Part shown: positions 1-16,546 of the stretch, piece by piece
Numbering within the stretch: the first letter of the stretch is position 1
Layout: each line of letters begins with the position of its first letter
From: Guillardia theta CCMP2712
Lineage: Eukaryota; Protista; Cryptophyta
Assembly (NCBI RefSeq): GCF_000315625.1
Contig: NW_005434673.1
Coordinates: 978,828-1,042,827, forward strand
Direction: 5' to 3'
DNA length: 64,000 bases
Notes under the pieces: generated by a model
The model's database searches: none
Told to the model about the DNA's origin: nothing
Seen by the model: the letters and a program-made list of their open reading frames with translations, nothing else
Position numbers and translations under genes: made by a program

Positions 1-681
1 AATCTCGCTGTGAACGGGCTCCCACCCAACACTTAATCCCTCACTCTCCCCTCCTCCCTCAACCCTCTTCCTCCCTCACCTCCATCCTGTGTTGGGATCT
101 ACTTGCAGCGGAACACATCTCCCGAACCCATAGCGGAAGTCGGCCAGGGACCCCGAGGCCCTCTTAGCAAACATCGCAGGAGCATTTGCCCTTCGCCGCA
201 TTATCTCCTCCTCCTGTGCGAAGCTCCTGACTCCGTTGAACTTGCTCGACTCCTCTGCCATCTTCTTCATCTCCTCCTGTACCGACACCTTGGTGCAGAA
301 CACCAGCACCCTCGACCCTCCCGTGAGACCATAGCTCTCCAAGCTCCGACTCCTCGCGTCCTCCCCCACTTCCGCGCCCCCGTCCCTCCATGTCGCCTCG
401 CTCAAGATGGCGCCATTGGCACAGACCTTGTGATGGCTCTGACTGCAATCTTTCTGCTGGGAGACCAACTCGTGGAGCTGGTACATGCTCGCATGGATGC
501 AGACAACGAAGCTGATCCCTGCTCCCGCTATCGTCACTCTACACTCGTCCTTGCCTACTTCGAGCGGAACCGTCCTCTGACTTCCACCCTCCTCCGAGCT
601 TTCTTTCAGCCGCTCATACTTTCGAGGAGCGCCTACGTGCCCAGCAGCGATGCTGAAGTCCAGCGGTCTAGGTGCGCTCAT
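1..681 (-). CDS. Ubiquitin-like domain protein, probably UBL-WLM (Wss1-like) metallopeptidase; 3' part lies beyond the left edge
   Basis: ATG at 681 (MSAPRPLDF). UBL-like segment ending SLESYGLTGGSRVLV, followed by VRSFAQEE..YGFGRCVPL, which resembles the linker preceding WLM domains. GTGAG donor at 79. The WLM core (HEXXH) is not in the window. Confidence 0.5.
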
Positions 682-1776
682 AGATTGAAGGAGCAGACTT
701 CGTTTCTCTGTGCTTGACCCTTCTGCAGTGTTCAATCCTCCTTCTATTCCCTTCCCTCCCTCTTGGTTAAACTCCTGGCTAGTCCTCCTTGTTCTCCACA
801 CGCTTGACTCGGTATCCCGTCCTCGTTCTCGTCCTCCTCCTGTCTTCCTCCTCCTCCTCCTCCTCCTCCTTATAAGATATAGCTCCGCTCCCTTCGTTGC
901 TCGCCTGGACAGCCTGCCCGACAAAATTTTCACTCAAACCGCACAAAAATCTATAACGGCTACAATATAAAATGTAACGGTATTGCGGTCAATGGGTCAT
1001 CAACGGTCAGATAGCGTTTTTATAACGATATTTTAGAACCCGTTGGCGTATAAGGCAAGGAGTGGGGGGAGATGGGGGTGATAAGCAGTAAAAGATGGGG
1101 TAGTCTGCTGCCGAACCTTTTGAGATCACAGCACATCTTTAAATTGGTTTTATTCGATATCGAGGGACGGTAAAGCATCTTTTTCATAAATCAAAACTAT
1201 ATATTTAATTTATTAAAATAGTTTTTAATCCTGAAGGTACTGTGTACTAAAATGTATTATATAACACCTATTTTTCAAGTCGATCTCTCTTATGTGGCTG
1301 CTGACACGGGTCATATGTGTGCCTTCAGGGGCCCTAGGTGGGTGGGGTAGTTTATGAAGGGGTACTTCTCGGTTCATATGGGGGGTGCTTTGTGGTGGTT
1401 CATGGGGGCAAGGGGGGGTGGTATTTTGGTTAACTCATTGGGGATGAGATGCAAATCCTCCATTGGGATGTCGGGGGGTTCGGGGGGTGGGTGGAGGGGG
1501 GTAGGGGGGTGCAAGGAGGTCTTCTACGTCCAACGCCAAACTTTTCCGACAGTATAGAAATGATTTTGATGAATCTTCAAGTCAATACTGTATTTTCAAA
1601 TTATTGAGAAATATGGGCTCGAATTTTATCATTTGGGAAACATGAAGGACCTCTGTCGCGGAAACACGTGCTGCGCATGCTCAAAACCTTGCTTTTTCCA
1701 TCCGCCCCCTTCCTGCCCGCGTCCCTGCCCACGTTGCTGCCAACCAACTATCTACTTCCCTTCCTCCTCTTCCCTC

Positions 1777-1975
1777 AAACCCTCATCCTTCCTCCTTCCT
1801 CCTTCCTCCTTCCTCCTTCCTCCTCCCTCCTCCCTCCTCCCTCCTCCCTCCTCCCTCCTCCCTCCTCCCTCCTCCTCCTCCTCCTCCTCCTTCCTCCTCC
1901 CTCCTCCCTCCTTCCTCCTCCCTCCTCCTTCCTCCCTCCTCCCTCCTCCCTCCTCTGCCCTTGCTGCCTCCCTTC
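1777..1975. repeat. (CCT/CCCT)n polypyrimidine microsatellite
   Basis: Directly visible. Confidence 0.9.
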
Positions 1976-2397
1976 TTCCTCGCTTGCCCAACTTAGTCAA
2001 TCGTCAACCACCCTCCAGCCATCCCTTCACATTTTCTCCTGCTCTCTGCATCTCTTATTCCATCCCTTCATCTACCACTTGCGCCGCCACCTTCAGCAGC
2101 ACCAGCACCACCAGCTATTACCTCAGCCATGGCAGCCACGTCGACGCAAACGACCTCATCCTGACTCCACCACCCTGATTCACCCATTCTTCTCACCATC
2201 TTCTCCTCCTGCTTCGCCACAACCATAACAATAACTAGCGCCGCCGCCGTCATCATCACCACCACAACCACCACCACAACCACTTTCAATCCCATCCCTC
2301 AACATTTCCTTAGCTTCCTGCCATATCAAGTCCTGCGGGCTCGTTGCTCGCAGTAAACGTTTGACTTCAACCTGACCATCCATGACAGGTGATCGCC

Positions 2398-5300
2398 ATG
2401 GATGCCATGCTCGTTCAGTACATCCGCCGTGGTACTCCTTCCAGCCTCAGGACCCTCCAGCAGGATGCGCTCTGGACGGGGATCCTGTGCGGAGGGTGCG
2501 TCATCCTGCTACAGCGGATGAACGTGCTGGATCTGATTCAGGGACCGGGGACATGGAAAGAGCATGCTGTGTGGTCGCTCAGGGGGATCCTGTCGAGGCT
2601 GCGGCAGGTGTACAAGGGCCTCTTCCAACCCAACAAGCCCCCGGTGTTGAAGATGCGGCAAGATGTTCCTCCGTCCTTCTGGGACCCTGAGAGGTAGGAG
2701 GAGGAAGAGGAGGAGGAAAGGAGGAAGAAGAGAAGGAGGAGGAGGAGGAGGAGGAGTGTGCTTGTGTGCTGATGCAGTCTTGGTAGCCCGTTGATGATCG
2801 GACCGGATGTGCCTCCTAGCACGGGGTCGCTCAGCGAGCCCCTGGTGTCGGGGATGTGGAAGGACGAGGATCTCGGGCGGGGGATGCGGTGGGAGCGGGA
2901 GACGCGTCCTCTGACGCGCCACCCGTCGAAGCAGGACCTCAAGTACCTCATGGCTCCTCACGGACCCGACAGCCCAGGACGGGGGAGGCCGGACTGGTCG
3001 GACATGCTGCACGGGCTCAAGAGCAGCGGGGGGAAGACCGGGCTGAGCCAGAGGTCGACGGGAGAATTGTCCGGGAGCAGGAGCATGGAGATCTTCCCGG
3101 ACGAAATCTCCGAGGCGACTGAAGAGGATATCGCCCTGGCTAAGGAGAGGTCGAGAGAGCGGGCCCACAACGCGCGATCCGCAGCGTCAGTCCGCGTGTT
3201 GGACTACCAGGGCTACCTGCAGCTGGACAAGATTCTCAAGGCGCAGGAGCCCCAGAGCAGGATCTACGACATGGAGGTCCACGACGAGATGCTCTTCATC
3301 ATCATCCACCAGACGTACGAGCTCTGGTTCAAGCAGGTGCTCCACGAGCTCGACTCCGTCCTCCACATGTTCAGCAGCCTCCCGCACAAGAGCGTGAAGG
3401 AGATGGACGTCTCCCTCTGCCTGTCGCGCTCCTCCCGGGTGGTTGAGATCCTCAAAGTTCTGGTCAGCCAGTTCGACGTGCTCGAGACGATGCACCCCCA
3501 GGCCTTCAGCGACTTCCGAGATTTCCTTTCCCCTGCCTCCGGCTTTCAGAGCATGCAGTTCCGCCTGGTAGTCACCGTGTCCTGCCGTTCCTCTTTCTCC
3601 TCCCCCCTCTCGATCTTCCCCCTTAGCCTTCCTTCCCCCCTCTCCCTCCTCCCTCTTCTTGACTCACGGCACACTCGTTTGCCTCCTCCTGCCATTCTCC
3701 GTCCCACTCGTCTTCCAAGATCCTGGCGCAGGCGCGGGAAGTGATCGTGCGGTGCTAGGTGGAGAACAAGCTGGGGATGCGACCGGAGCAGCGGATCCAA
3801 CACTCGGGATGTCCCTACTACCAGCATCTTGCTCGAGAGGAGGAGCGAGAGGAGGTGAGCTCGACTTTGATGCTTCGATCGTGCTGAAAGACTTTTCCTT
3901 GTCCCCCCCCTCTCCCTCTCCCTCTCCCTCTCTCTCTCTCCCTCTCCCTCTCCCTCTCCCTCTCCCTCTCCCTCTCTCTCTCTCTCCCTCTCCCTCTCCC
4001 TCAGGTGTTGGCAGCTGAGCGTGAGGTGGGTCTCTTGGACTATCTCGGCGAGTGGCTGGAGAAGGTGAGGAGGGAGGAGAAGATGTGGATGTTGTTGATG
4101 CCTGACTTCGAGAAGCTGATGGATGAAGTTTTCAACGACTTCGATTTCGCCGCCTACATGAAGGAAGCGATCGAGCAGGTGAAGGGAAGGAGGTCGATGC
4201 CGTTGGAGGTGACTTGGTGCGGTACAGGCTGCTGTTCATGATCGTTCGGCGATCGAGAGATTTCCAACAGTGAGAACGTCCAACAGACACGTTGAGGTGA
4301 ACGTGTCAATGGCAATATTGATGATGATAATGATGATGATAATGATGATGATGATGATGTGATTGACTGTTGACGTTGTTCTCTGTCGTCCCTGACACTG
4401 TGGATGGTCAGAGCAAGGAGAGTGCGCTCAACGGTCTTGAGAAGAAGAGGTAATCTTGTTGGCCTCCCCCGCAATCTCTCACTCCCTCTTGCAGGCTCGC
4501 GCACTTGAAACTCTTCGATGAGCAAATTCACAACGAACTCATCAAGAAAGGCATCCGCCAGGTGATTATCTCCATCACCATCACCATGATCGCATGCTGA
4601 TTTGAGCTCTTGGCAGTTGAGCTTCAAGGCTACGATGGCGTGTGTCTTCGTTCAGTCCTTCTCCCATGAAGCAGCTTTCCAGGTCCACCCCATCCCTCCA
4701 TGCTCTGTTTGCGATCTCACTGGCTCAATGCAGACAATTCAGCGATTCTTGACGAAATTGATCGAGATCGACGAACTCATAGCAAGATGGCGGCAGAGGT
4801 GACTCTCCTCCCGCACATGACGAGTCAAACTTGCTCATCGTATTACCTCAGACATTCGAGTCTTGTGCTCAGAATGATTGGAAGCAAGGATGGAACCGGA
4901 GGTAAGTTGTTTCTTTCTCTGCCTCTGCCTCTGCCTCTGCCTCTGCCTCTGCCTCTGCCTCTGCCTCTGCTGCTCCTCTCCTGCTCCTCTCTTCTCCTGT
5001 CCTCTCCTCTGCCTCTGCCTCTCTTCCCTTCCCCTTCTTTCTTTTCTTCTTGTAAATTTTGCTGACTGGCTTCATACAGGTTCATCGGGACATGCCTATC
5101 TCAACGCAGTAATGCAGAAGTCAAGAATTTTCGTCGGTGAGGAGGAGGACGAGGGGAGGAGGGGCTCGTTCTCACTATGATTACAGATTTGTGCCACTGC
5201 TCGCACTATCTCCTCCCTCAACACTCAATGCTTCCCCTCCCTGCGGAGGTCAAGAGGAGGTAACCAAATCGATCCTCGTCATGTTGTCATTCTCTACATT

Positions 5301-5598
5301 CGCTCTCCGCGTCTCTTCTCTTCCTCATCTCATCTCCTCTCTTCTTCACTCTTCTCGTATCATCCTATTTCCTCCCATTTCATTTCTCTTCTCCTCATCT
5401 CCTCTCCCTTTCGTCTCGCCTTCTCCCCTCCTCTCCTTGCTGCTTCTCTATTCATTGGGGTTGACGAGTGCACCTAGGTTGCAAATGAGCTTATCCCGAG
5501 CTTCTTCGCATCCCTTCATGAACGAGCTAGGTGAAACAACGTCGGAGAGAGGGACAACAAGATCTGATGACTGTTGGGCAGTCGACTTCAGAGACTAG
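2398..5598 (+). CDS. TDO2: Tryptophan 2,3-dioxygenase (eukaryote/vermilion type), multi-exon, with long N-terminal extension
   Basis: LDYQGYLQLDKIL, VHDEMLFIIIHQTYELWFKQ, FRDFLSPASGFQSMQFR, IDELIARWR..H..LVLRMIGSKDGTGG/SSGHAYL. Last exon stop at 5596-5598. Start codon tentative. Confidence 0.93.
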
Positions 5599-5902
5599 CA
5601 GCAACGCTACCTTCAACCAGCCCCGTCATCCGCCCTTCTCTTTTCTCTCGTGTATATTCTTTGATCTTCGACCCTCATTCACGCTCGATGAAATTCTTTC
5701 TACACTTTAATCATTCAAACGTAAAAGTACATGATAGAAAACTGTCTCCCGTCGGAAAACTGTCCTCCTCCTCCTCCCCCTCCTCCCCCTCCTCCCCCTC
5801 CTCCCCCTCCTCCCCTCCTGCTACACCTTCTCGCCTCGCCCTCCTCTTCATTCACCAGCCCACTGACACCCCACACCCTTCCACCTTCGCCTCTGACTTC
5901 CG

Positions 5903-6793
5903 CTACTCAAGGTAACCCCGCCGAGCTTGACGGGCCTGCGGGCTGTTCCCGTTAAAGAAGTGAATTTTCCGGGCGAAGGGCGACGGCTGCTGCAGCACCG
6001 TCTTGGGCTCCTCCGACGGAAGTCGCAGGAGAGGGACGGGGCTCGCAAAGGAGCCTTGAGGGCTGAGGTCTCTCACAGTGAACCCTCCCGAGCTGAGAGG
6101 CGTCAGGCTGTCCGACACGTCCACCTGGAGGCCTGAGATCGGTTCATGCAGCTGGACGTCAGGCCGGGACCGATCATTCCCGTCTTGCTCGATGTCAAGC
6201 GTGACATCACTAGGATCCATCACAGGAGAGTGTCCTCCCTCCTCCCTCACGATCTCACTCTCCCCCTGCACGACTTGTCGCACCCCCGCACCTCTTGGAC
6301 CAACCAGCTCCTCCTCCACTTGGACGTTCCTTCCCTCCTCCACTTCCGAAGGATCCGGGGAAACTTCATCCGAGGGGGTCGCGAGCGATGCCTCAAGAGC
6401 TTCTTGAGGAGGCTGCCACTGGTTCAGCTTCCGATCACCTCCCTCTTGCAGCCCTGCGACTGCCATCCTCATCTCTGCAGGACCCACAGCTGGCGATGTG
6501 CTGCCACTGCTCGGCGTCAACTTAGGCGTCAGCTTCCAGCTCCGTATCCCCGAGGCCTCGCTCGAAGTTGAGTCCCTGTCCCCTCCCTTAGCACGATCGT
6601 GCGGTTCCACTTGAATCGATATGCTCATCGGCGTGCCTCCTGCACTCTGCCGATTGAAAATCTCCTCTTCAGGCAGCGAGATCGAGGTGCTCGGGCCCTC
6701 TTGCAAGTCCGCTGATACAACGAGAGTGAGGCAAGAACAAGAGGGAAGGTGGAGCGGGCGGGAGGAAAGAAGTTGAAACCGATGAAGAAAAGG

Positions 6794-8697: not shown

Positions 8698-11101
8698 TTC
8701 GTTGTTAAGGTTTGAAACAATCACACGAAACGAGTAGGAAGTTCAGTCGAGTAGAAGACTTTCTTGCTTCTTCCATGGCCTACAAGATCTTGCTGGGTGA
8801 ATCTCCTCGAGCTCGAATCTGGTGTGCCGGAAGGAGCTCTCAAAATTACTGTCTATCAGACAAAAAGTTAAAAATACACATCAGACTTGAAAACCAATGA
8901 ACATGGAAACATCACTGAGCTGAAATCTGATTCAAGAAAGGTTGGAAAACATCGACATCACACTTGCTCAACTCAAATTGAATAAGGCAGTCAGGATGAT
9001 ATGCCATCGGAAAATTCAAGTCCACAAAATCAGTATCACATCAACTGTTGCACAATTGTAAATGCACAAGTGTATTCCGTAAACTCTGTGAAGTGAAGCA
9101 TGAAATCACAACAGTGATGGTGGGGGAGGGGAAAAAGAACGAGCACAAGCTTGAGTGTGGACTTGTTAAGTGTTTCATGCTGGATCTGAACATCAACTCA
9201 ACTCTGATCTGATCGACATCTCGAGGAGATCTCTAAATTGACCACACCAAACCTGTTTCATGAAGACAATCTCACCTTCTCTTCCCCTTCTTCTTCATCG
9301 CGCCCACCAGCTCGCTCCATTTGCAGGAGGAAGGACCATTGGGAAGGTTTGCGGAAGGGGAATAAAGGGGGTACCCCATTGGTGGGTTAGCACGGGTGGG
9401 TTTGAAAAATAGGGTGGGGTACCAGGGTGGGGCGCTTGCGGCAGAAGAGGAGTTGGGGGTAGGGTAGTAGACTAGGAGGGTGACACAACGGGTACCAGGG
9501 AACAAAGATTGCACAGAAATGCACGGGTACTGGAGAGGAAATGGGGGTAGGGACTATGGCGGGTAGGGTAATGGACCCCACTGGGATCAACCAGAAAATG
9601 CAGTTCGTGAGTTTCATTTGTGGTGGGGGTAGTGGGAATACGGGTAGGGGTGATGTGTTAAGTTCAAACACAGGAGGTGGGTACTTGAAGGAACTCGGTG
9701 GGGAAAAGGGTGGGGTGGGTGTTCTGGGGGGAAAGGGACAAGGAACTGGGGAGTTGGCCCGGGTGGGGGAAAAAATGCTGAAAGGTCGACAGATCAGATT
9801 TGGGTGGGTAGGGTGGGGGGTAAAGGAGGGGTACAGACTGGGCATTTTGAAAGTTGAACTTTGGAACAGAGGGTAGTAGCCAACGGGGGTAGTGGAGGGG
9901 TGGGGGTAGCTGAGCCGGGCTGCACAGCATGAGCTGTTCGAAGAATCCACTACAATGTGACAGGGTGGGGTAGTTCAGATTACGTGTTGACACTATGTAG
10001 GTACCGGTGGTAGTGCAGAGTGCGCCGGATGTGAGGACCCGGGTGGTAGAGGGAGAAAAAGACCCGTGCACGAAGATGAAGTGGTGTTAGAGATAGGGTG
10101 GGGTAGCTGATCAGTTTTCAACTTTTCTGGCATGGGGTCGTGACTTGGGGGTTGTCGCTCTGAGAGTGATGGGCTCCAAGAATATTTAGAAACTTTCTCT
10201 ATAATTTTGAAATCTGAGAATAATCTTTGGAATAGAATACAGGTTTTCCGAAGTTCAGTCGCCGTCGCTCGCCGAGTGTCACCCGGAGTCGGACAGCCGG
10301 GCCGGGCGGGCCTCCGAGTCCGGGCCGCGCCCGCGGCCGACAAACCAGTAAAGAAGGATCTTGAGATCCATTGCACTTTGTACCAAGAATAATTAAGTAG
10401 CAGCTTTTTCCATTTTAAAAGGGAACAATGGTACACATTATAGATACAAAAAATCCTTTTTTCGTATCTATGTAAAATATCTTGGTAACATGAGACTATC
10501 TGAAGATTCATTTTAGGTACAAATTGCATTATACAATGATTATACGGAAGCTGGTTCCGTCATAGAACCTTTGTACCGTAGTTTTTAAAAACTCAAAAAT
10601 GTGACAAAAATGGTTGTAAACCATGGGCGCTTGAGAGCTGGCGTGAGAGGAGAGAGGAGAGTGGAGCATGGAACAGGGAGCAGGGAGCAGGGAGCAGGGA
10701 GGAGCAGGACAGCATTGAAAAATGAGGAAGTTCACTTGTAGATTGAGATGGGAGAAAGCCAGCGTTTGGGTTGAGCAAGAGTCTCGGGAAAAGAAAGCAG
10801 ATTAGGCGGGAAAGACAGGGACCTAGTCGGCAGGTTAGGTACGCGCTGGAACGTTTGGGCGCTTTTGAAGTATCAAATAATGCAGACACGTTTATGTAGA
10901 GCAGACGAATATGGACGTGGTGTGGAGGGAAGTAAGCAGGAGGGAAAGAGAGCACAAGTAACGATATAAAACAGTGAAAAATGATGGGGGAGGAACTTAT
11001 AGTGCTTGTCCTAGGCCTCGTCTCGTCACCCTTCCTGCATGATCATTCTGGTCCTATAAATATCCTAGGGATTTTTTATCTCCCATGCTGAATATTCAGA
11101 G

Positions 11102-14100
11102 ATGGACTCGAGGATCCAGCCGCACTCGGCAGGGAGCATGAACGCAGGCGGGCAAGAGGAATTTCAGCACCTAGCGTACCCGTCGACAGAGCTCATGGAG
11201 AAGGAGCCCTGTACCGGCGTCTCTGTGAATGGGAGGAATGAGGGAGCGAAGGGCGAAGGCATGCAGCTCAGGAAGAGAAAACCCTCCCTTGTAGGAAGGA
11301 GGAGTGTATCACCACCGAGGAGAGGAACTTCGAACCGATCGATCTCACAGGAGGAGGAGAATGAAGCGCCCACGCGCCCACGCACTCTCTTCAAGACCTT
11401 CCCCGGCGTCTTTCTCTTCTGCTTCTGGGTGGTTGAGTTTGGGATCCTCGTTCACCTCCTCCCCCTCATCACTCCGTACGATTGTGTGGCTTCCCAGGAG
11501 GCTGAGCAACTGCATGAGGCGCTCAAGAATTCCAAGATTGTGAAAGTGATGATTGCACTCATCTTTGGGATCTGCATCATGTTAGACTTGTCGGGCATTG
11601 TGATCTCCATCAGCCCAAAGAAGAAGCAGTTGAACAGCATGGTGTTGTTCATCAACTCCGTCTCCTTCAGCATTTACATCTCCACCATCTTCGACGTCAT
11701 GCCGACAATCTGCGATGTCAACGGAAAGCCCATCCCGATATTTGTTTATGTGCAGTGGATACACACAACACCTGTCATGATCATAGTTCAGTCTGCTTTG
11801 GGGATGTCCATGGAGGTTCGTGGCTGTTCACGATGCATTCAGATCTGACGCACGCTCAGGAGGATTTTGTGAAGGATTGGAAAGCTGTTTGCTGGACCAT
11901 CTTTTGGGATGAATTGATGATGGTCCTGGGTAATAACATCACAGGTTTCACATGCTTCCATGCTCACGGTTGGACAGGTATCGTCCATACCTTCCTGGAC
12001 CAGCACTGGATAGGGTGGGCAGCTTTCTTTGCCTCCTGTTTGAGCTTCGTGCTAGTTTGCAGAGGAATCCATCATCTGTCAAAAGCAAGGTGATAGAATC
12101 GTCAGCGCAAGTCTCCCGCTAGTCCACCCTCACTCTTGTTTCAGCGCAAACAACGCCGCTACCACCTACGAGATGACGTCGATTCAAGGCCTCGAGATGC
12201 TCACCTACATGCTGTGGTCTGCCTTCCCTTGCATTCATTTCTTGCACTACATGGGTGAGTTTCTATATTGGTCCTACAGAGAGGGAGAGGTGTTCTTACT
12301 GACGTGCAGGATTCATTGACGGCCTGTATTACGAGATCCTTCGCTCATTCGTCGATGTCACGTCGAAGTTGATCTATTCAGGTCAGTGCAGACAGACAGT
12401 GTTGCTCTTCGTGACTCCTTCAATGCTCCAGTTGCTCTGCTCACCGGAAATTTTTGCGTTTTGGATATTGTCGCAACGTTGCGACTAGCACAGGTGAGAA
12501 AAGGGGAACATGGGTGTGGGGATGGCGGAAAAGTAGTAGTTTGAGGTGTGGTCAGAGGAGGGGGAGGAGCAGGAGGAGGCGAAAGATAATCATGAGATTC
12601 CTGCTGCAGGTTCAAGCAGAGAAGGAAAGAGACTCGAAGCATAACGCTGTCGTGCGTGCCGAGGTCTCCTCAGCCTCGATCTTCAGGCATCTGAGCTGCC
12701 ATGCAGGCCATGAATCGAGCGCTTCAGATGGCGTACCTGGAGGCAGAGACTTCAGCCCGCCTCGCCCGTCAGTTCCTCGCCAACATGAGCCATGAGCTTC
12801 GCACTCCCCTCAACGCCGTCATCGCCTTCACTTCCCTCGTCCTCGACTCCCGCGACCTCAGTCCCCTCCATGAAGAGTACCTCTCCTCCTCCTTGACCTC
12901 CGCCGAGGCTCTCCTTGGCATCATCAACCAGGTCCTGGACTTCTCCAAATTTCATGCGCAGGAGGAGGAGGAGGAGGAGGGAGGGGAGGAAGAACGACCC
13001 AAGTCGTCCGACGCTCGGCCCTCGCTAGTTCAGCTCAACATCCAGACGTTCGACCTGCTCAAAATCTGCGACGAGATCTGCGACATTCTGGCAGAGCGAG
13101 TGAACGCGCGCGACGTCGACTTTGCGGTGGAGATCTGTCCACTGCTGCGGGGGGAGAAGGTGCCGAAGCTGCTGGGAGACCCGGTGAGGCTCCGCCAGTG
13201 TCTCGTCAACCTCTGCGACAATGCCGCCAAGTTCTCCAAGGATACGGGGGGTCAGGCCCTCTTGTCCGTCGAGGTGGAGGAAGGAGCCTTCGGCGAGCTG
13301 CTGGTGCTCGCTCAAGTCTGGGACAACGGCGATGGCATCCCCAAGGACAAGCAGCCGCTCCTCTTCGTTCCTTTCTCGCAGGTCCCCCCCCTCACCCCCC
13401 CCCCCCACACACACCAAGCATCTCTGCTGCTGGAGTGTTTGACATGGTACCAGGTGGACTGCAAGTACTCCCGCAAACATGGCGGGACGGGGCTGGGGCT
13501 CGCGATCACCAAGAAGATCGTGGACGCTATGGAAGGTTCGATCGAAGTTTTTAGCGAAGGACCAGACAAAGGGTCCACCTTCACCATGCAGATCTCGTTC
13601 CCCGTCGCCGCCGATGGGGAGGAGGGGCTGCAGCAAGGTTCTCCTCTACGTATGACCAAGCTGAGGTACGATCGTCTCTTTCGCCTCCCCTCTCCCCCTT
13701 TCCCTGTCTCCCTCCTCCTCTCCGTCTCCCTCCCTCCTCTCCACTCTCCCCCTTCTCTCTCCGCTGATCACCCCATCGCAGCGGCTGTGTCAAGGTGCTG
13801 TTGCCCAAGGGTCCCGGCCAAGAGCTCGCGGTCAAACTTTGCGAATCCTGGGGACTGAAGGTGGACAACTTTTGCTACGAGCAAAATGCGGTGCCATCGA
13901 TAGGCAAGATCCGGTCGCTGTTAAACAGCTTCGAGTGGAAGGGAGAAACCAAGGTCGTGCTGCTCATCGACTCCAAGATCCACTCCCTCCTCATCGACGA
14001 GAACATCCAGCTGGCAACTGGCAAGAACATCCTCGTGGTCGGCAGCCTCGACCACCTCTGGGAGCAGATGCAGCGGGTGCGGGTGGATCCTGCTAGGTTC

Positions 14101-15181
14101 CTCCTCCGTCCCATCAAGTCCTCTCTCTTCCGCCACAAGCTGGAGGCTGCTATTGCTCTCTCCAGCACCACAGACTCGCACCTGACCGTAGAGTCCATGC
14201 GCACCTCGTTCTTCAAGGAGGTTCAGTTCGGGACGAGGCTCGACTTCCAGTACGACTCCAGCATGCCCACTCATGTTCTGGTGGTGGAGGTAGGGATTCT
14301 CGTTTCCTCTCACTTGCTCTGCTCTGAGTTTGTTCTCCCTCGCCCTCTTCCTCGTGCTACTCGTGCTGCGTCCTCACCTTCGTCCACGTCCTCCCTCCTC
14401 ACACTGGATGCAGGACAACCCGGTCAATCAGAAAGTTGCGGTCGCGATGGTGCAGAAGACTCTCGGTAAGTGACTTGAGGGGGGGGGGGGGGAGGCAGCG
14501 CATGACGAGGAACATCAGGACGGGAGCATGTGATTGTTGACGTCGCAAACAACGGTGAGCAAGAGTCTCGCCACGTTCGAGTTTTGTGCCTTCCTCGTCC
14601 TCATCCTGTGCCTTGATTCGCATCCCCCTCGTGCTGCACCTTGCTGCCTCCTCGGCCTCCTCTGCCTCCTATTCTCTTTCTCCTGCCATGACGTGCTGCT
14701 CTTCCAGGTCGGGAAGGCTTGGCCAATTCAACAGAGCACGGCCACAAGTGAGTTAGCTGGCAGGGGTGCTGGAGAAACTGACGAGGAGCAGGTACGATCT
14801 TATCCTCATGGACGTCCAGATGCCTGTCATGGACGGCTTGGAGGCCACGAGACGCATCAGGGAGTGGGAGAAGGTGGGTGGAGAGTCTGTGCTAGACCAG
14901 CTCTGACATGGGTGCAGTCGCATGCGGGGGAGGCTCCATACTTCATCGTTGCGGTCACAGCGCATGCCAGCAAGATGCATGTGGAAGAATGCTTAGAAGC
15001 AGGTGAAGTCTTCACTTTACTCCTCTCACCCTGCAGTCTCCTTCCTCTCCCTCCCCTCCCCTGAAGGATCCCCTCAGGAATGAACAGGCACGCGAGCAAA
15101 CCGCTCACCCTCGTGTCGATGAGAAGAGTTGTCGAGGAGTATCGCGATTGGCGCGTCAAGATGTTCAAATCTTGTAAATAG
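11102..15181 (+). CDS. Histidine kinase rhodopsin (microbial rhodopsin + HisKA + HATPase_c + degenerate REC + REC)
   Basis: Spliced exons give helix [15 protein letters not shown], helix [11 protein letters not shown], helix F MLWSAFP and helix [11 protein letters not shown] (Lys at 12366-12368). H-box [11 protein letters not shown]; N-box [10 protein letters not shown]; G1 DNGDGIP; G2 GGTGLGL; receiver [28 protein letters not shown]. Stop TAG at 15179-15181. Confidence 0.92.
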
Positions 15182-15303
15182 CGAAGATTCACCAACATCG
15201 ATATTGTTTCTCTACAAAGAACAGCCCATTCACAAACAAACCTGCCGCCACATTCCTTCCATTTCCTCTGAGCAGGAGCGAGAGAGAGCGAAGGGCGGGG
15301 GCT

Positions 15304-16546
15304 TTAGAGGAGGAAGGAGTCAACGGAATGTCTCCTGGCACCGGCGGTGTCAGGCATGAGGCAGACCAAGGAGCCAGCAGCGAGGGGGGAGAGGTTCAGC
15401 AGGTCGGGGATGAGGTCAGGGTTGAGCCCCTGCAGGGTTGTCATGTTCATCCCGAACCTGCTCGAGAGCCTCGTCCAGGTATCCCCCACCTGCGACAGGT
15501 ACAGATTCCCGAGCCTGATCCTCTGACCGACCAGCAGCTCGTCCGGGGAGAAGAGCTGGCGGTTCGATGACCAGATCTGCGTCCAGTCGGTCTGGTGGCG
15601 GTAGGCGAGGCTCTGGAGGGAATCGGAGGAGGAGATGCAGTAGAAACATTTGTCGACCGAGTACCTCACCTGGGCATACTCGCAGCTCCCTCGCCTCAGC
15701 AGCTCAGCCACGAACGTCCGCGCGTTCCCCGCCATGTCCATCTCAGGCGTCCAGCGGATCTGGAGGGAGTGAACTTTGACGTATCCCCACTCCCTCGCGT
15801 CGATGAACTGATCGCCGTTGGTGTCCAGCAGACTCACGAGCTTGCTGCGCATGTCCTTGCTGTAGTTGAAGGCGCCGGCACGCGAGAACTCCAAGCGGGA
15901 GAGCACGCCATTGCTGTCGGCGTCAAGAAAGGAGACGAGGAGGTAGGGAGAGGAAACTTTCATCATTCTGTAGGCTCTCAGCGCCTCTTGCGCGTCCAGC
16001 ACGCCGTTCCCATCCACATCGAAGGTGTCGAAGATGACAGTGCGATAGATGAAGTCCCCTTGACGGCTCCACTCCTACACCATCAGGTCAGGACCAGCAG
16101 AGTCAGCCCTCAGAGGAAACCTGCTTTGACCGCCTCCCATCCTTGTTCAAGTCCAACTGATTCACAAGGTCATAGCGAATGGCGCTGGCGTTGGTCAGGC
16201 CCAGGGCCCTTTCAAACTCCAGCACCTCACTGTAGCTCAGCGAGAAATCGCCATTGAGATCGAAAACATTGAAGAGCACGTCGGAGTATGGCAGAGGGTA
16301 GCTGGACGACGTCGACACGTCAACAATGGAGCCTGGAGGAACCGAGTCCCGTTCGATGCTGTCCATGCTCAAGGTGCTCCATATCATGCTGAAGTTGACT
16401 TGGATCAAGGTCTCGCAGCCGGGCGACGTGAATTCCAGAGAGAGGTTGTAGGGTAGAAGTGGGCATTCAATCAAGGCTGTACAACACCCAATCCATGAAA
16501 TGAACACAATCGCTGCATACCCTATCCTCCCACTCCTTTGCAACAT
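15304..16546 (-). CDS. Secreted protein with five EF-hand loops and two C-terminal LysM domains (2 exons, intron 16075-16120)
   Basis: Hydrophobic N-terminus (YAAIVFISWIGCCTA). EF loops DLNGDFSLSYSE, DLNKDGRRSKQE, DVDGNGVLDAQE, DADSNGVLSRLE, DTNGDQFIDARE. LysM patterns Y.I...DSLQSLA....W..IW..N......L.VGQRI and GDTW..LS.RFG.....LQ.LNP. Confidence 0.82.

What the first reader, a model, noticed from the sequence alone, without database searches (positions are those of the whole stretch)
11102..15181. Light-gated hybrid two-component receptor: 8-TM rhodopsin-HisK-pseudoREC-REC with no cyclase output
Seen: hand-splicing short introns (e.g. 11816-11859, 11930-11977, 12090-12144) joins a complete type-1 rhodopsin in frame to a coiled-coil linker ([17 protein letters not shown]), an intact H-box His (12791-12793), N/G1/F/G2 boxes, a degenerate receiver and a canonical receiver (Asp 14811-14813), followed by a stop. 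An extra hydrophobic helix ([21 protein letters not shown]) precedes helix A. Known: enzymerhodopsins have 8 TMs, and the best-studied green-algal histidine kinase rhodopsins (Chlamydomonas COP5/COP6, 2c-Cyclop) end in a nucleotide cyclase. Inference: this protein signals by phosphorelay to a separate HPt/response regulator. The rhodopsin half is fragmented in the ORF track and could easily be mis-annotated as a plain histidine kinase. I cannot tell whether this gene has already been catalogued.
Basis: partly seen in the sequence, partly recalled or inferred. Interest (0 to 1): 0.88.

Follow-up and report, generated by a model that had tools for sequence, protein, structure and literature searches.

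The report
Cyclase-less histidine-kinase rhodopsin, Guillardia theta
This is a real, expressed 995-residue light-sensor gene of the alga Guillardia theta, with a retinal-binding rhodopsin fused to a two-component histidine kinase; the protein type is already known, but the reference annotation records only its last 141 residues.

Summary
Window 11102-15181 (+) holds a 16-exon gene with 15 GT-AG introns of 43-153 nt. Spliced RNA contigs from three runs show every joint, and one 3122-nt contig spans 11039-15240. The spliced product is 995 aa and is identical to a MMETSP transcript protein (P0190).

Pfam finds Bac_rhodopsin, HisKA, HATPase_c and Response_reg, and no cyclase. An AF2 model gives 8 TM helices, including TM0; its best fold match is the 8-TM rhodopsin phosphodiesterase. 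The Schiff-base Lys355, H-box His427 and receiver Asp913 are intact. Residues 695-822 fold as a receiver that lacks the acidic pair and the Lys.

The organism is Guillardia theta CCMP2712. Its reference model here (GUITHDRAFT_149795) covers only residues 855-995. The gene is also missing from the published list of 42 G. theta rhodopsins.

The kind is known. Cyclase-less histidine kinase rhodopsins (HKRs) are described in green algae, and two G. theta HKRs were predicted in 2020. I find six such loci in this genome, and the scan noted the same architecture on four other pieces of it.

Features particular to this copy are Val at BR-R82, Gln at BR-D85, and a 2-residue insertion in an otherwise fixed 70-residue Lys-to-His linker. 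One HPt candidate exists in the genome. Light regulation and phosphorelay are inferred, not shown.

The parts
11013..15240 (+). Transcribed region (outermost ends of the spliced RNA contigs). The 5' leader holds two short uORFs, with ATGs at 11039 and 11085.
   Evidence: X4 and X1 contigs start at 11013/11016; the X2 contig spans 11039-15240. uORFs read.
11102..15181 (+). CDS of 16 exons, 995 aa plus stop: 11102-11815, 11860-11929, 11978-12089, 12145-12254, 12310-12381, 12432-12493, 12610-12663, 12707-13381, 13454-13665, 13782-14289, 14414-14465, 14519-14554, 14708-14747, 14792-14873, 14918-15002, 15078-15181.
   Evidence: The translation is identical to P0190, a MMETSP transcript ORF.
11102..11401 (+). 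N-terminal region, residues 1-100. Polar, with no Pfam match; predicted cytosolic because of TM0.
   Evidence: no family. Topology inferred from the 8-TM model and the Rh-PDE precedent (PMC7644710).
11402..11470 (+). TM0, the extra N-terminal transmembrane helix (residues 101-123). It is followed by a short lateral helix, ECL0 (132-143; 11495-11530).
   Evidence: AF2 model helices H12-34 and H43-54 of P0190:90-500. The best fold match is the 8-TM Rh-PDE 7cj3/7d7q, TMt 0.73-0.87. The motif PGxxxxxxW is conserved in homologs.
11534..12445 (+). Type-1 rhodopsin helices A-G (residues 145-364), spread over exons 1-6. Key residues: Val215 (BR R82; 11744-11746), Gln218 (BR D85; 11753-11755), Trp219, Thr222/Thr223, Trp323, Pro327, Asp351 (BR D212; 12354-12356), Schiff-base Lys355 (12366-12368).
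   Evidence: Pfam Bac_rhodopsin, 64.1 bits. Residue-level alignment to BR and Rh-PDE. Lys present in 24 of 24 family members and Asp351 in 23 of 24.
12446..12766 (+). Helical linker from helix G to the DHp domain (residues 365-418), crossing introns 12494-12609 and 12664-12706. It holds a 2-residue insertion relative to 19 of 22 relatives, at the exon 6/7 junction (about 12610-12621).
   Evidence: AF2 helices at residues 369-394 and 398-445. Lys-to-His spacing is 72 here against 70 in the relatives. The junction is RNA-supported.
12767..12955 (+). HisKA (DHp) domain, residues 419-481, with the phospho-acceptor His427 at 12791-12793 (SHELRTPLN).
   Evidence: Pfam HisKA, 63.8 bits.
13175..13597 (+). 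HATPase_c (CA) domain, residues 555-671, crossing intron 13382-13453. Boxes present: N (CDNAAKF), G1 (DNGDGI), F (FVPFSQ), G2 (GGTGLGLAI).
   Evidence: Pfam HATPase_c, 88 bits. Motifs read.
13783..14166 (+). Receiver-like (pseudo-receiver) domain, residues 695-822, a (beta-alpha)5 fold. Gly-Pro-Gly replaces the acidic pair and Arg replaces the conserved Lys (RPIK). An Asp (Asp757; 13969-13971) remains at the end of beta3.
   Evidence: No Pfam hit. AF2 pLDDT 81.4. The top Foldseek PDB matches are nearly all receiver domains, E 1.5e-4 to 5e-3, TMt 0.56-0.67. Family alignment.
14275..15127 (+). Canonical receiver domain, residues 859-978, spread over 7 exons. Key residues: Glu863/Asp864, phospho-acceptor Asp913 (14811-14813), Thr947 (14957-14959), Lys969 (15098-15100).
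   Evidence: Pfam Response_reg, 74.3 bits. The reference model GUITHDRAFT_149795 equals residues 855-995.
15179..15181 (+). Stop codon. No further coding exon follows.
   Evidence: RNA contigs end at 15201-15240. No Guanylate_cyc match on contig C1.

Best explanation
The locus encodes a histidine kinase rhodopsin (HKR) of Guillardia theta CCMP2712. It is a single 995-aa membrane protein.

**Layout, N to C.**
1. Cytosolic N-terminus.
2. TM0.
3. A 7-TM type-1 rhodopsin that should bind retinal at Lys355.
4. A long helical linker.
5. A dimerisation/phospho-acceptor domain with His427.
6. An ATP-binding catalytic domain.
7. A receiver-like domain that probably cannot be phosphorylated.
8. A canonical receiver with Asp913.

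There is no cyclase or other output domain.

**Proposed mechanism (inferred).**
1. Retinal isomerisation moves helix G.
2. The movement passes down the helical linker to the DHp bundle.
3. This changes autophosphorylation of His427.
4. The phosphoryl group passes within the dimer to Asp913.
5. From there it goes to a separate HPt protein, for which one candidate exists in the genome.

**Shown here:** gene structure, expression as one mRNA, domain content, intact key residues, and predicted folds.

**Inferred:** retinal binding, the sign of the light response, and the phosphorelay partners.
For: **Gene and transcript**
- One clean ORF results after removing 15 GT-AG introns.
- Every joint is present in RNA contigs of three runs, and one contig spans the whole CDS.
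- The product is identical to the MMETSP transcript protein P0190.

**Domains and folds**
- Four Pfam domains score above their gathering cut-offs, and nothing else is found.
- The best PDB sequence and fold matches for the N-terminal half are the 8-TM S. rosetta Rh-PDE, then bacteriorhodopsin.
- The AF2 model (pLDDT 84.5) shows TM0 + ECL0 + TM1-7 + linker + a DHp hairpin.
- The pseudo-receiver fold is supported.

**Conserved residues**
- Lys355 is kept in 24 of 24 family members, Trp219 in 24 of 24, Asp351 in 23 of 24 and His427 in 22 of 24.

**Family context**
- About 20 full-length relatives share the same Rhod-HisKA-HATPase-REC composition without a cyclase.
- Six colinear paralogous loci exist in the genome.
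- An HPt exon with 'HFHAHSIKGASATIGF' passes the Pfam cut-off.

**Literature**
- HKRs are light-regulated hybrid kinases, only some of which carry a cyclase (PMC12558739).
- Two G. theta rhodopsins were predicted to be HKRs (PMC7714340).
Against: - No biochemical evidence exists for retinal binding, for a photocycle, or for kinase activity in any cyclase-less HKR of this clade.
- The primary counterion Asp (BR D85) is Gln and the BR R82 Arg is Val. The chromophore chemistry may therefore be unusual or weak.
- No stand-alone response regulator was detected in the six-frame search. Every receiver found sits inside a hybrid kinase gene.
- Only one HPt candidate was found, on a single exon at a marginal score (25.1 bits against a 24.6 cut-off).
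- The raw-read RNA run gave only 13 reads, all near the 3' end. Native expression may therefore be low.
Confidence: 0.8

Rival explanations
1. The receiver domain is the end of the pathway. Phosphorylated Asp913 changes the protein's own interactions, localisation or oligomeric state, and no HPt/response-regulator relay follows.
For: - I found no stand-alone response regulator.
- There is only one marginal HPt candidate.
- Rozenberg et al. (bioRxiv 10.1101/2020.04.15.042127, read) suggest that the receiver domains of HKRs may also act as trafficking signals.
Against: - Hybrid kinases with a C-terminal receiver normally feed an HPt (established two-component knowledge).
- An HPt exon with the canonical HxxKG motif exists.
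- The six-frame search is coarse for short, intron-split domains.
Confidence: 0.15
2. The rhodopsin domain is no longer a photoreceptor. It serves as a membrane anchor or as a sensor of something other than light, and the kinase is regulated otherwise.
For: - Gln stands at the BR-D85 position and Val at BR-R82. Ours is the only Val among 24 relatives; Arg is kept in 17 of 24.
- G. theta expresses several rhodopsin-like genes without the Lys (PMC7714340).
Against: - Lys355, Asp351, Trp219, Thr222/223, Trp323 and Pro327 are kept, and the Lys is invariant in the family.
- Gln at position 85 is common in functional modular rhodopsins: 17 of 47 carry it, and Cop5 lacks Asp85 yet is photoactive (PMC7693036).
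Confidence: 0.08
3. It is a two-component cyclase opsin (2c-Cyclop type) whose cyclase part was missed, either as a further exon or as an alternative isoform.
For:
- The genome holds many cyclase domains: 81 six-frame matches.
Against: - RNA contigs from three runs end 20-60 nt after the stop.
- The MMETSP ORF ends at the same stop.
- No PF00211 hit lies on contig C1 or near any of the six HKR loci.
- None of the full-length relatives carries PF00211.
- A convergent gene starts about 120 nt downstream.
Confidence: 0.02

Closest known systems
Guillardia theta putative HKRs Gt_107802 and Gt_122016 (Konno et al. 2020, PMC7714340)
   Same: - Same genome and the same colinear rhodopsin-HK-(pseudo-REC)-REC layout.
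- Same Gln at BR-D85, and the same Asp and Lys in helix G.
- GUITHDRAFT_107802 carries the same four Pfam families.
   Different: - They form a separate clade from the window gene, which groups with the C99 and two C84 loci (tree).
- In the best local alignment to GUITHDRAFT_107802 (P0047), covering residues 141-666, the window protein is 47% identical.
- They keep Arg at BR-R82.
- Their Lys-to-His linker is 70 residues, not 72 (shown for P0047).
- They are in the published 42-gene list; the window gene is not.
Cyclase-less green-algal HKRs such as Ostreococcus tauri Ot-HKR (Luck et al. 2019, cited in PMC7693036 and PMC12558739)
   Same: Rhodopsin + histidine kinase + response-regulator domain without a cyclase. 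The output is presumed to go through the receiver.
   Different: - Different lineage (cryptophyte, not prasinophyte).
- Ot-HKR has a measured green-absorbing photocycle. This protein has no measurements at all.
Chlamydomonas/Volvox COP5 (HKR1) and COP6 / 2c-Cyclop (Luck 2012; Tian 2018, as cited in PMC7693036)
   Same: - 8-TM enzymerhodopsin with HK and RR domains on one polypeptide.
- Lack of the Asp85 proton acceptor is shared with Cop5 and Cop6 (PMC7693036).
   Different: - Those proteins continue into a nucleotide cyclase (plus SAM and other domains). This one stops 17 residues after the receiver.
- A receiver-like domain lies between the CA domain and the receiver here.
Salpingoeca rosetta rhodopsin phosphodiesterase, transmembrane domain (PDB 7cj3, 7d7q; PMC7644710)
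   Same: - Best sequence match in the PDB (E 2.3e-8) and best fold match (TMt 0.73-0.87 over the four chains).
- TM0, a lateral ECL0 helix, and a helical linker leaving TM7.
   Different: - The output there is a phosphodiesterase, not a kinase.
- Rh-PDE has Glu at the D85 position and keeps the Arg (alignment).
Hybrid kinases with a receiver-like domain before the true receiver, e.g. plant cytokinin receptors AHK2-4 (from my own knowledge, not tested here)
   Same: The order is CA domain, then a degenerate receiver, then a canonical receiver.
   Different: - I compared no sequences.
- The sensor domain there is CHASE, not a rhodopsin.

Membership tests
Histidine kinase rhodopsin (HKR, enzymerhodopsin) | Type-1 rhodopsin domain with the Schiff-base lysine in helix G | tested here: met
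   Pfam Bac_rhodopsin, 64.1 bits against a 24.6 cut-off. Lys355 aligns with BR K216 and Asp351 with D212. The Lys is invariant in 24 relatives.
Histidine kinase rhodopsin (HKR, enzymerhodopsin) | HisKA + HATPase_c on the same polypeptide, with the H-box His and the N/G1/F/G2 boxes | tested here: met
   HisKA 63.8 bits and HATPase_c 88 bits. His427 lies in SHELRTPLN. The motifs CDNAAKF, DNGDGI, FVPFSQ and GGTGLGLAI are present.
Histidine kinase rhodopsin (HKR, enzymerhodopsin) | Response-regulator receiver domain with the phospho-acceptor Asp | tested here: met
   Response_reg 74.3 bits. Glu863/Asp864, Asp913, Thr947 and Lys969 are present.
Histidine kinase rhodopsin (HKR, enzymerhodopsin) | Rhodopsin and kinase are one gene and one transcript | tested here: met
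   A 3122-nt RNA contig spans 11039-15240. The same joints appear in two further studies. The identical 995-aa MMETSP ORF exists.
Histidine kinase rhodopsin (HKR, enzymerhodopsin) | Eighth N-terminal helix (TM0) giving a cytosolic N-terminus | tested here: met
   This is a prediction only. AF2 places a helix at residues 101-123 packed as in Rh-PDE. The hydropathy peak at 95-126 is the second highest in the protein.
Histidine kinase rhodopsin (HKR, enzymerhodopsin) | Retinal binding and light-dependent change of kinase activity | not testable with these tools
   This needs expression, spectroscopy and a phosphorylation assay.
Two-component cyclase opsin (2c-Cyclop / COP6 type) | C-terminal class III nucleotide cyclase domain | tested here: not met
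   No PF00211 match in P0190. The transcript ends after the stop. No cyclase match lies on contig C1.
Phosphorylatable receiver domain (for residues 695-822) | Acidic pair after beta1, Asp after beta3, Thr/Ser after beta4, Lys after beta5 | tested here: not met
   The fold is receiver-like. However, Gly-Pro-Gly replaces the acidic pair and Arg replaces the Lys. Only Asp757 is kept. No Pfam match.

The most novel reading that the evidence does not exclude
The window gene and its three closest paralogs (loci C99, C84a, C84b) may form a cryptophyte HKR subclade with unusual retinal chemistry.

- They have lost both the BR-R82 arginine and the BR-D85 carboxylate, which leaves Asp351 as the only counterion. 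That could give an unusual chromophore state, for example an unprotonated UV-absorbing or bistable Schiff base as in Cr-HKR1.
- The window copy alone adds 2 residues to a helical linker that is otherwise fixed at 70 residues. The insertion shifts the helical register by about 200 degrees. It could invert or re-tune the sign of the light response relative to its paralogs.
- The relay could end, via the single HPt candidate, on the opsin-less HisKA-HATPase-REC-REC-cyclase gene on contig C25. That would be a split version of the green-algal 2c-Cyclop.
Probability: 0.15. Interest if true: 0.65.

Novelty: new member of a known kind. Interest (0 to 1): 0.4.

Why it matters
HKRs are the least understood enzymerhodopsins. 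Kinase activity has been shown only indirectly, through the cyclase output of 2c-Cyclops, and most papers describe the family as green-algal.

- **Family size.** G. theta, a model cryptophyte that has supplied widely used channelrhodopsins, carries six cyclase-less HKR loci. Only two were previously counted.
- **Annotation.** At least four of the six are truncated or fragmented in the reference annotation. The window gene is reduced there to a 141-aa 'response regulatory domain' protein.
- **Practical use.** The RNA-verified full-length model makes the protein ready to express. It also corrects the rhodopsin and histidine-kinase counts for this genome.
- **Experimental handle.** The window copy is a natural variant, with no Arg82, no Asp85 and a +2 linker. 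It can be used to study how a rhodopsin drives a DHp bundle.

The kind itself is not new.

Tried and rejected
1. **My first hand model.** I used a single 209-nt intron, 14555-14763. This is also in frame and gives 991 aa with '[15 protein letters not shown]'. RNA contigs instead show two introns (14555-14707 and 14748-14791) around a 40-nt exon, so that model is rejected.
2. **An earlier trial.** It used the wrong donors at 12382-12609 and 13637 and broke the frame.
3. **The search for homologous proteins on P0190 residues 95-385.** It returned no hit, even though relatives up to 57% identical over this region were already in hand. I treat this as a tool failure, not as evidence.
4. **The protein-atlas search.** It gave only generic Bac_rhodopsin clusters, scoring 0.81 or less.
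5. **Pfam Hpt search of the genome.** At the default E-value it found nothing. One exon appeared only at E <= 10 and then passed the cut-off when scanned alone.
6. **Raw-read RNA run X20.** It gave 13 reads, too few for ends or strand.
7. **Papers not held.** Luck et al. 2012 (PMC3501036) is not held. The supplement of Kabbara et al. 2018 is not held. I therefore could not tell whether this gene is one of their GthetHK3/5/8/10.
8. **Ot-HKR and COP5 sequences.** None was available by reference, so I made no direct comparison or joint tree with green-algal HKRs.
9. **Complex prediction was not used.** The HPt gene model is incomplete.

Full report
**1. What is in the sequence**

The ORF track between 11102 and 15181 is fragmented. 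Exon-sized pieces already match Bac_rhodopsin weakly, and HisKA and HATPase_c strongly. Removing GT-AG introns by hand gives a clean reading frame.

I then laid public runs on window 10600-15800. Contigs of three RNA-type runs from three studies (X1, X2, X4) carry the spliced form, and every joint is GT..AG. The 15 introns are:

| Intron | Coordinates |
|---|---|
| 1 | 11816-11859 |
| 2 | 11930-11977 |
| 3 | 12090-12144 |
| 4 | 12255-12309 |
| 5 | 12382-12431 |
| 6 | 12494-12609 |
| 7 | 12664-12706 |
| 8 | 13382-13453 (seen as contiguous pieces of the contigs) |
| 9 | 13666-13781 |
| 10 | 14290-14413 |
| 11 | 14466-14518 |
| 12 | 14555-14707 |
| 13 | 14748-14791 |
| 14 | 14874-14917 |
| 15 | 15003-15077 |

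One X2 contig of 3122 nt runs from 11039 to 15240, so rhodopsin, kinase and receiver lie on one mRNA. The contigs end 20-60 nt after the stop at 15179-15181.

My only error was in the receiver. RNA shows a 40-nt mini-exon (14708-14747, '[13 protein letters not shown]') where I had placed one long intron. The corrected CDS is 2988 nt, or 995 codons.

**2. Identity of the gene and its annotation**

- The genome has 87.1 Mb in 669 contigs and dozens of rhodopsin loci.
- Named hits identify it as Guillardia theta CCMP2712.
- A cluster look-up returned P0190, a 995-aa ORF of MMETSP Transcript_13022. It is letter-for-letter identical to my RNA-based model. X2 (2014; contig 3122 nt) may be the same data set as the MMETSP transcript (3126 nt), so these two may not be independent. 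X1 and X4 are.
- The same cluster holds the reference-genome model for this locus: GUITHDRAFT_149795 / XP_005842415.1. It is 141 aa, is named 'Response regulatory domain-containing protein', and equals residues 855-995 only.
- The profile search returned no longer protein from this locus. It listed proteins from 207 to 1760 aa.
- The alignment file of the 42 G. theta rhodopsins in Konno et al. 2020 contains none of nine diagnostic peptides of this protein. It does contain the paralog Gt_122016.
- The ID 149795 is not in their gene list.

The rhodopsin and kinase parts of this gene are therefore absent from the reference annotation and from the published rhodopsin census. The full-length ORF does exist, unnamed, in a public transcriptome.

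**3. Domains and key residues**

Pfam on P0190 gives four domains and nothing else:

| Domain | Residues |
|---|---|
| Bac_rhodopsin | 167-364 |
| HisKA | 419-481 |
| HATPase_c | 555-671 |
| Response_reg | 859-978 |

Alignment of the rhodopsin part to bacteriorhodopsin and Rh-PDE gives these equivalences:

| BR residue | This protein |
|---|---|
| R82 | Val215 |
| D85 | Gln218 |
| W86 | Trp219 |
| T89 / T90 | Thr222 / Thr223 |
| D96 | Val229 or Gln230 (non-carboxylic either way) |
| W182 | Trp323 |
| Y185 | Phe326 |
| P186 | Pro327 |
| D212 | Asp351 |
| K216 | Lys355 |

The kinase keeps His427 and the N, G1, F and G2 boxes. The receiver keeps Glu863/Asp864, Asp913, Thr947 and Lys969.

**4. Predicted structure of the N-terminal half**

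I ran AF2 on residues 90-500 with a 24-sequence family alignment. Mean pLDDT was 84.5. The model shows these elements:

- TM0 at 101-123
- a short lateral helix at 132-143
- seven TM helices
- a linker helix at 369-394
- a DHp hairpin at 398-445 and 451-490

The best PDB fold matches are the four chains of the 8-TM S. rosetta rhodopsin phosphodiesterase (TMt 0.73-0.87), ahead of bacteriorhodopsin.

**5. The receiver-like domain**

Residues 695-863 have no Pfam match. AF2 with 16 homologs gives a (beta-alpha)5 fold at pLDDT 81. Its best PDB matches are almost all receiver domains, with E from 1.5e-4 and TMt 0.56-0.67.

In the family alignment the acidic pair is replaced by Gly-Pro-Ser/Gly. The beta5 Lys is replaced by Arg in the invariant motif 'RP.K'. 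An Asp at the end of beta3 is mostly kept. 'Pseudo-receiver' is a fair name, but I have not shown that it cannot be phosphorylated.

**6. Family context**

- An exhaustive HMMER search of 1.84 billion representatives with the N-terminal rhodopsin half found only 40 proteins at E <= 0.001.
- All nine hits of 560 aa or more that I scanned have Bac_rhodopsin plus HisKA. Most also have HATPase_c, three have Response_reg, and none has a cyclase.
- The profile search gave about 20 such proteins, mostly unnamed marine metagenome or metatranscriptome and MMETSP sequences.
- Within G. theta there are six colinear loci:

| Locus | Reference model |
|---|---|
| C1 (this gene) | GUITHDRAFT_149795, 141 aa |
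| C99 | GUITHDRAFT_89769, partial, 512 aa |
| C84, two loci | GUITHDRAFT_77158 and 77188, kinase-only fragments |
| C272 | Gt_122016 |
| C31 | GUITHDRAFT_107802, 868 aa |

- A maximum-likelihood tree puts them in two clades, (C1, C99, C84a, C84b) and (C31, C272). The window gene is the earliest branch of the first clade, with support 86/95. Its best full-length match is only 48% identical, and that match is the C99 paralog.
- All six loci have Gln at BR-D85. Arg at BR-R82 survives only in C31 and C272.
- Across 24 relatives, position 82 is Arg in 17, His in 4, Phe in 2 and Val in 1 (ours). Position 85 is Glu in 13, Gln in 9, and Thr or Met in the other two.
- Gln at this position is common in modular rhodopsins, including photoactive ones (PMC7693036).

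**7. A feature particular to this copy**

The distance from the Schiff-base Lys to the phospho-His is exactly 70 residues in 19 of 22 relatives, including the three G. theta paralogs with sequences in that alignment. In the window protein it is 72.

The two extra residues sit at the exon 6/7 junction ('LAQ|VQAEKERD' against 'AQLRS--ERD'). That junction is RNA-supported. In a continuous helical linker, two residues shift the register by about 200 degrees. Whether this changes signalling is unknown.

**8. Downstream partners**

- No cyclase domain lies on this contig or beside any HKR locus.
- A six-frame Pfam search found one HPt exon, at G000:C259, containing 'HFHAHSIKGASATIGF'. It scores 25.1 bits against a 24.6 cut-off when scanned alone.
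- Every receiver match in the genome lies inside a hybrid kinase gene, so no stand-alone response regulator was seen. The search is coarse for intron-split domains.
- One of those genes, on C25, is an opsin-less HisKA-HATPase-REC-REC-cyclase.

**9. Comparison with what is known**

- HKRs are an established enzymerhodopsin family, and 'some' of them contain a guanylyl cyclase (PMC12558739).
- Ot-HKR is a characterised rhodopsin of this family (PMC7693036).
- Konno et al. 2020 predicted two G. theta HKRs (PMC7714340).
- Kabbara et al. 2018 listed four multi-TM G. theta kinases, together with Micromonas HK2/3, as an 'undescribed HK group' without recognising the rhodopsin (PMC6324907).
- TM0 and 8-TM topology are established for enzymerhodopsins (PMC7644710).
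- This scan itself noted the same architecture on four other pieces of this genome.

**10. Verdict**

This is a new, mis-annotated member of a known family, not a new kind of receptor. Light regulation, the sign of the response and the relay partners remain to be tested.

Noticed in passing
L021 (G000:C25:716500-724500), + strand, about 316-6761 in locus coordinates: A large opsin-less gene with a PAS-like N-terminus, then HisKA ('[18 protein letters not shown]'), HATPase_c, two receivers and a Guanylate_cyc domain (206.8 bits). This is a two-component cyclase without a rhodopsin, in the same genome whose six HKRs lack a cyclase.
   Followed up: partly
L020 (G000:C259:17913-21032), - strand, 1423-1686 and 1702-1827: The only HPt candidate found in the genome. 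One exon with 'HFHAHSIKGASATIGF' scores Pfam Hpt 25.1 bits against a 24.6 cut-off. A possible upstream exon reads 'VDLATALERCSGSMELLNQV'. The gene model is not resolved.
   Followed up: partly
L015-L019 (G000:C84:194000-203999, C99:1-9000, C84:1-4000, C272:13000-22999, C31:66000-75999): Five paralogous HKR loci, colinear with the window gene. Three of them (C99 and both C84) carry rhodopsin plus kinase in one long open frame. In the reference annotation they appear only as fragments: GUITHDRAFT_89769 (512 aa, partial), 77158 (276 aa) and 77188 (207 aa, partial).
   Followed up: partly
window 12610-12621: A two-residue insertion in the Lys-to-His helical linker (72 residues against 70 in 19 of 22 relatives), exactly at an RNA-supported exon junction.
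   Followed up: partly
window 11039-11141: Two upstream ATGs in the 5' leader. One opens a 6-codon uORF (11039-11059). The other opens a uORF at 11085 that overlaps the main ATG out of frame.
   Followed up: no
window 14555-14791: A single intron 14555-14763 would also keep the frame and would encode a different receiver helix alpha2 ('VLEKLTRSR'). No RNA contig uses it. It may be a relic or a rare alternative isoform.
   Followed up: partly
window 13381-13421, 13666-13781, 14480-14492: Introns carry long homopolymer or CT-rich tracts (a C-run, a CT-rich 116-nt intron, a G13 run). Unrelated contigs attach at the CT-rich tract as loose ends in the read-laying tables.
   Followed up: no
P0001 (ENA contig of 1253 nt): A 248-aa ORF 95% identical to exon 1 of the window gene, with scattered substitutions. 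This points to a closely related Guillardia strain or species in an environmental assembly.
   Followed up: no
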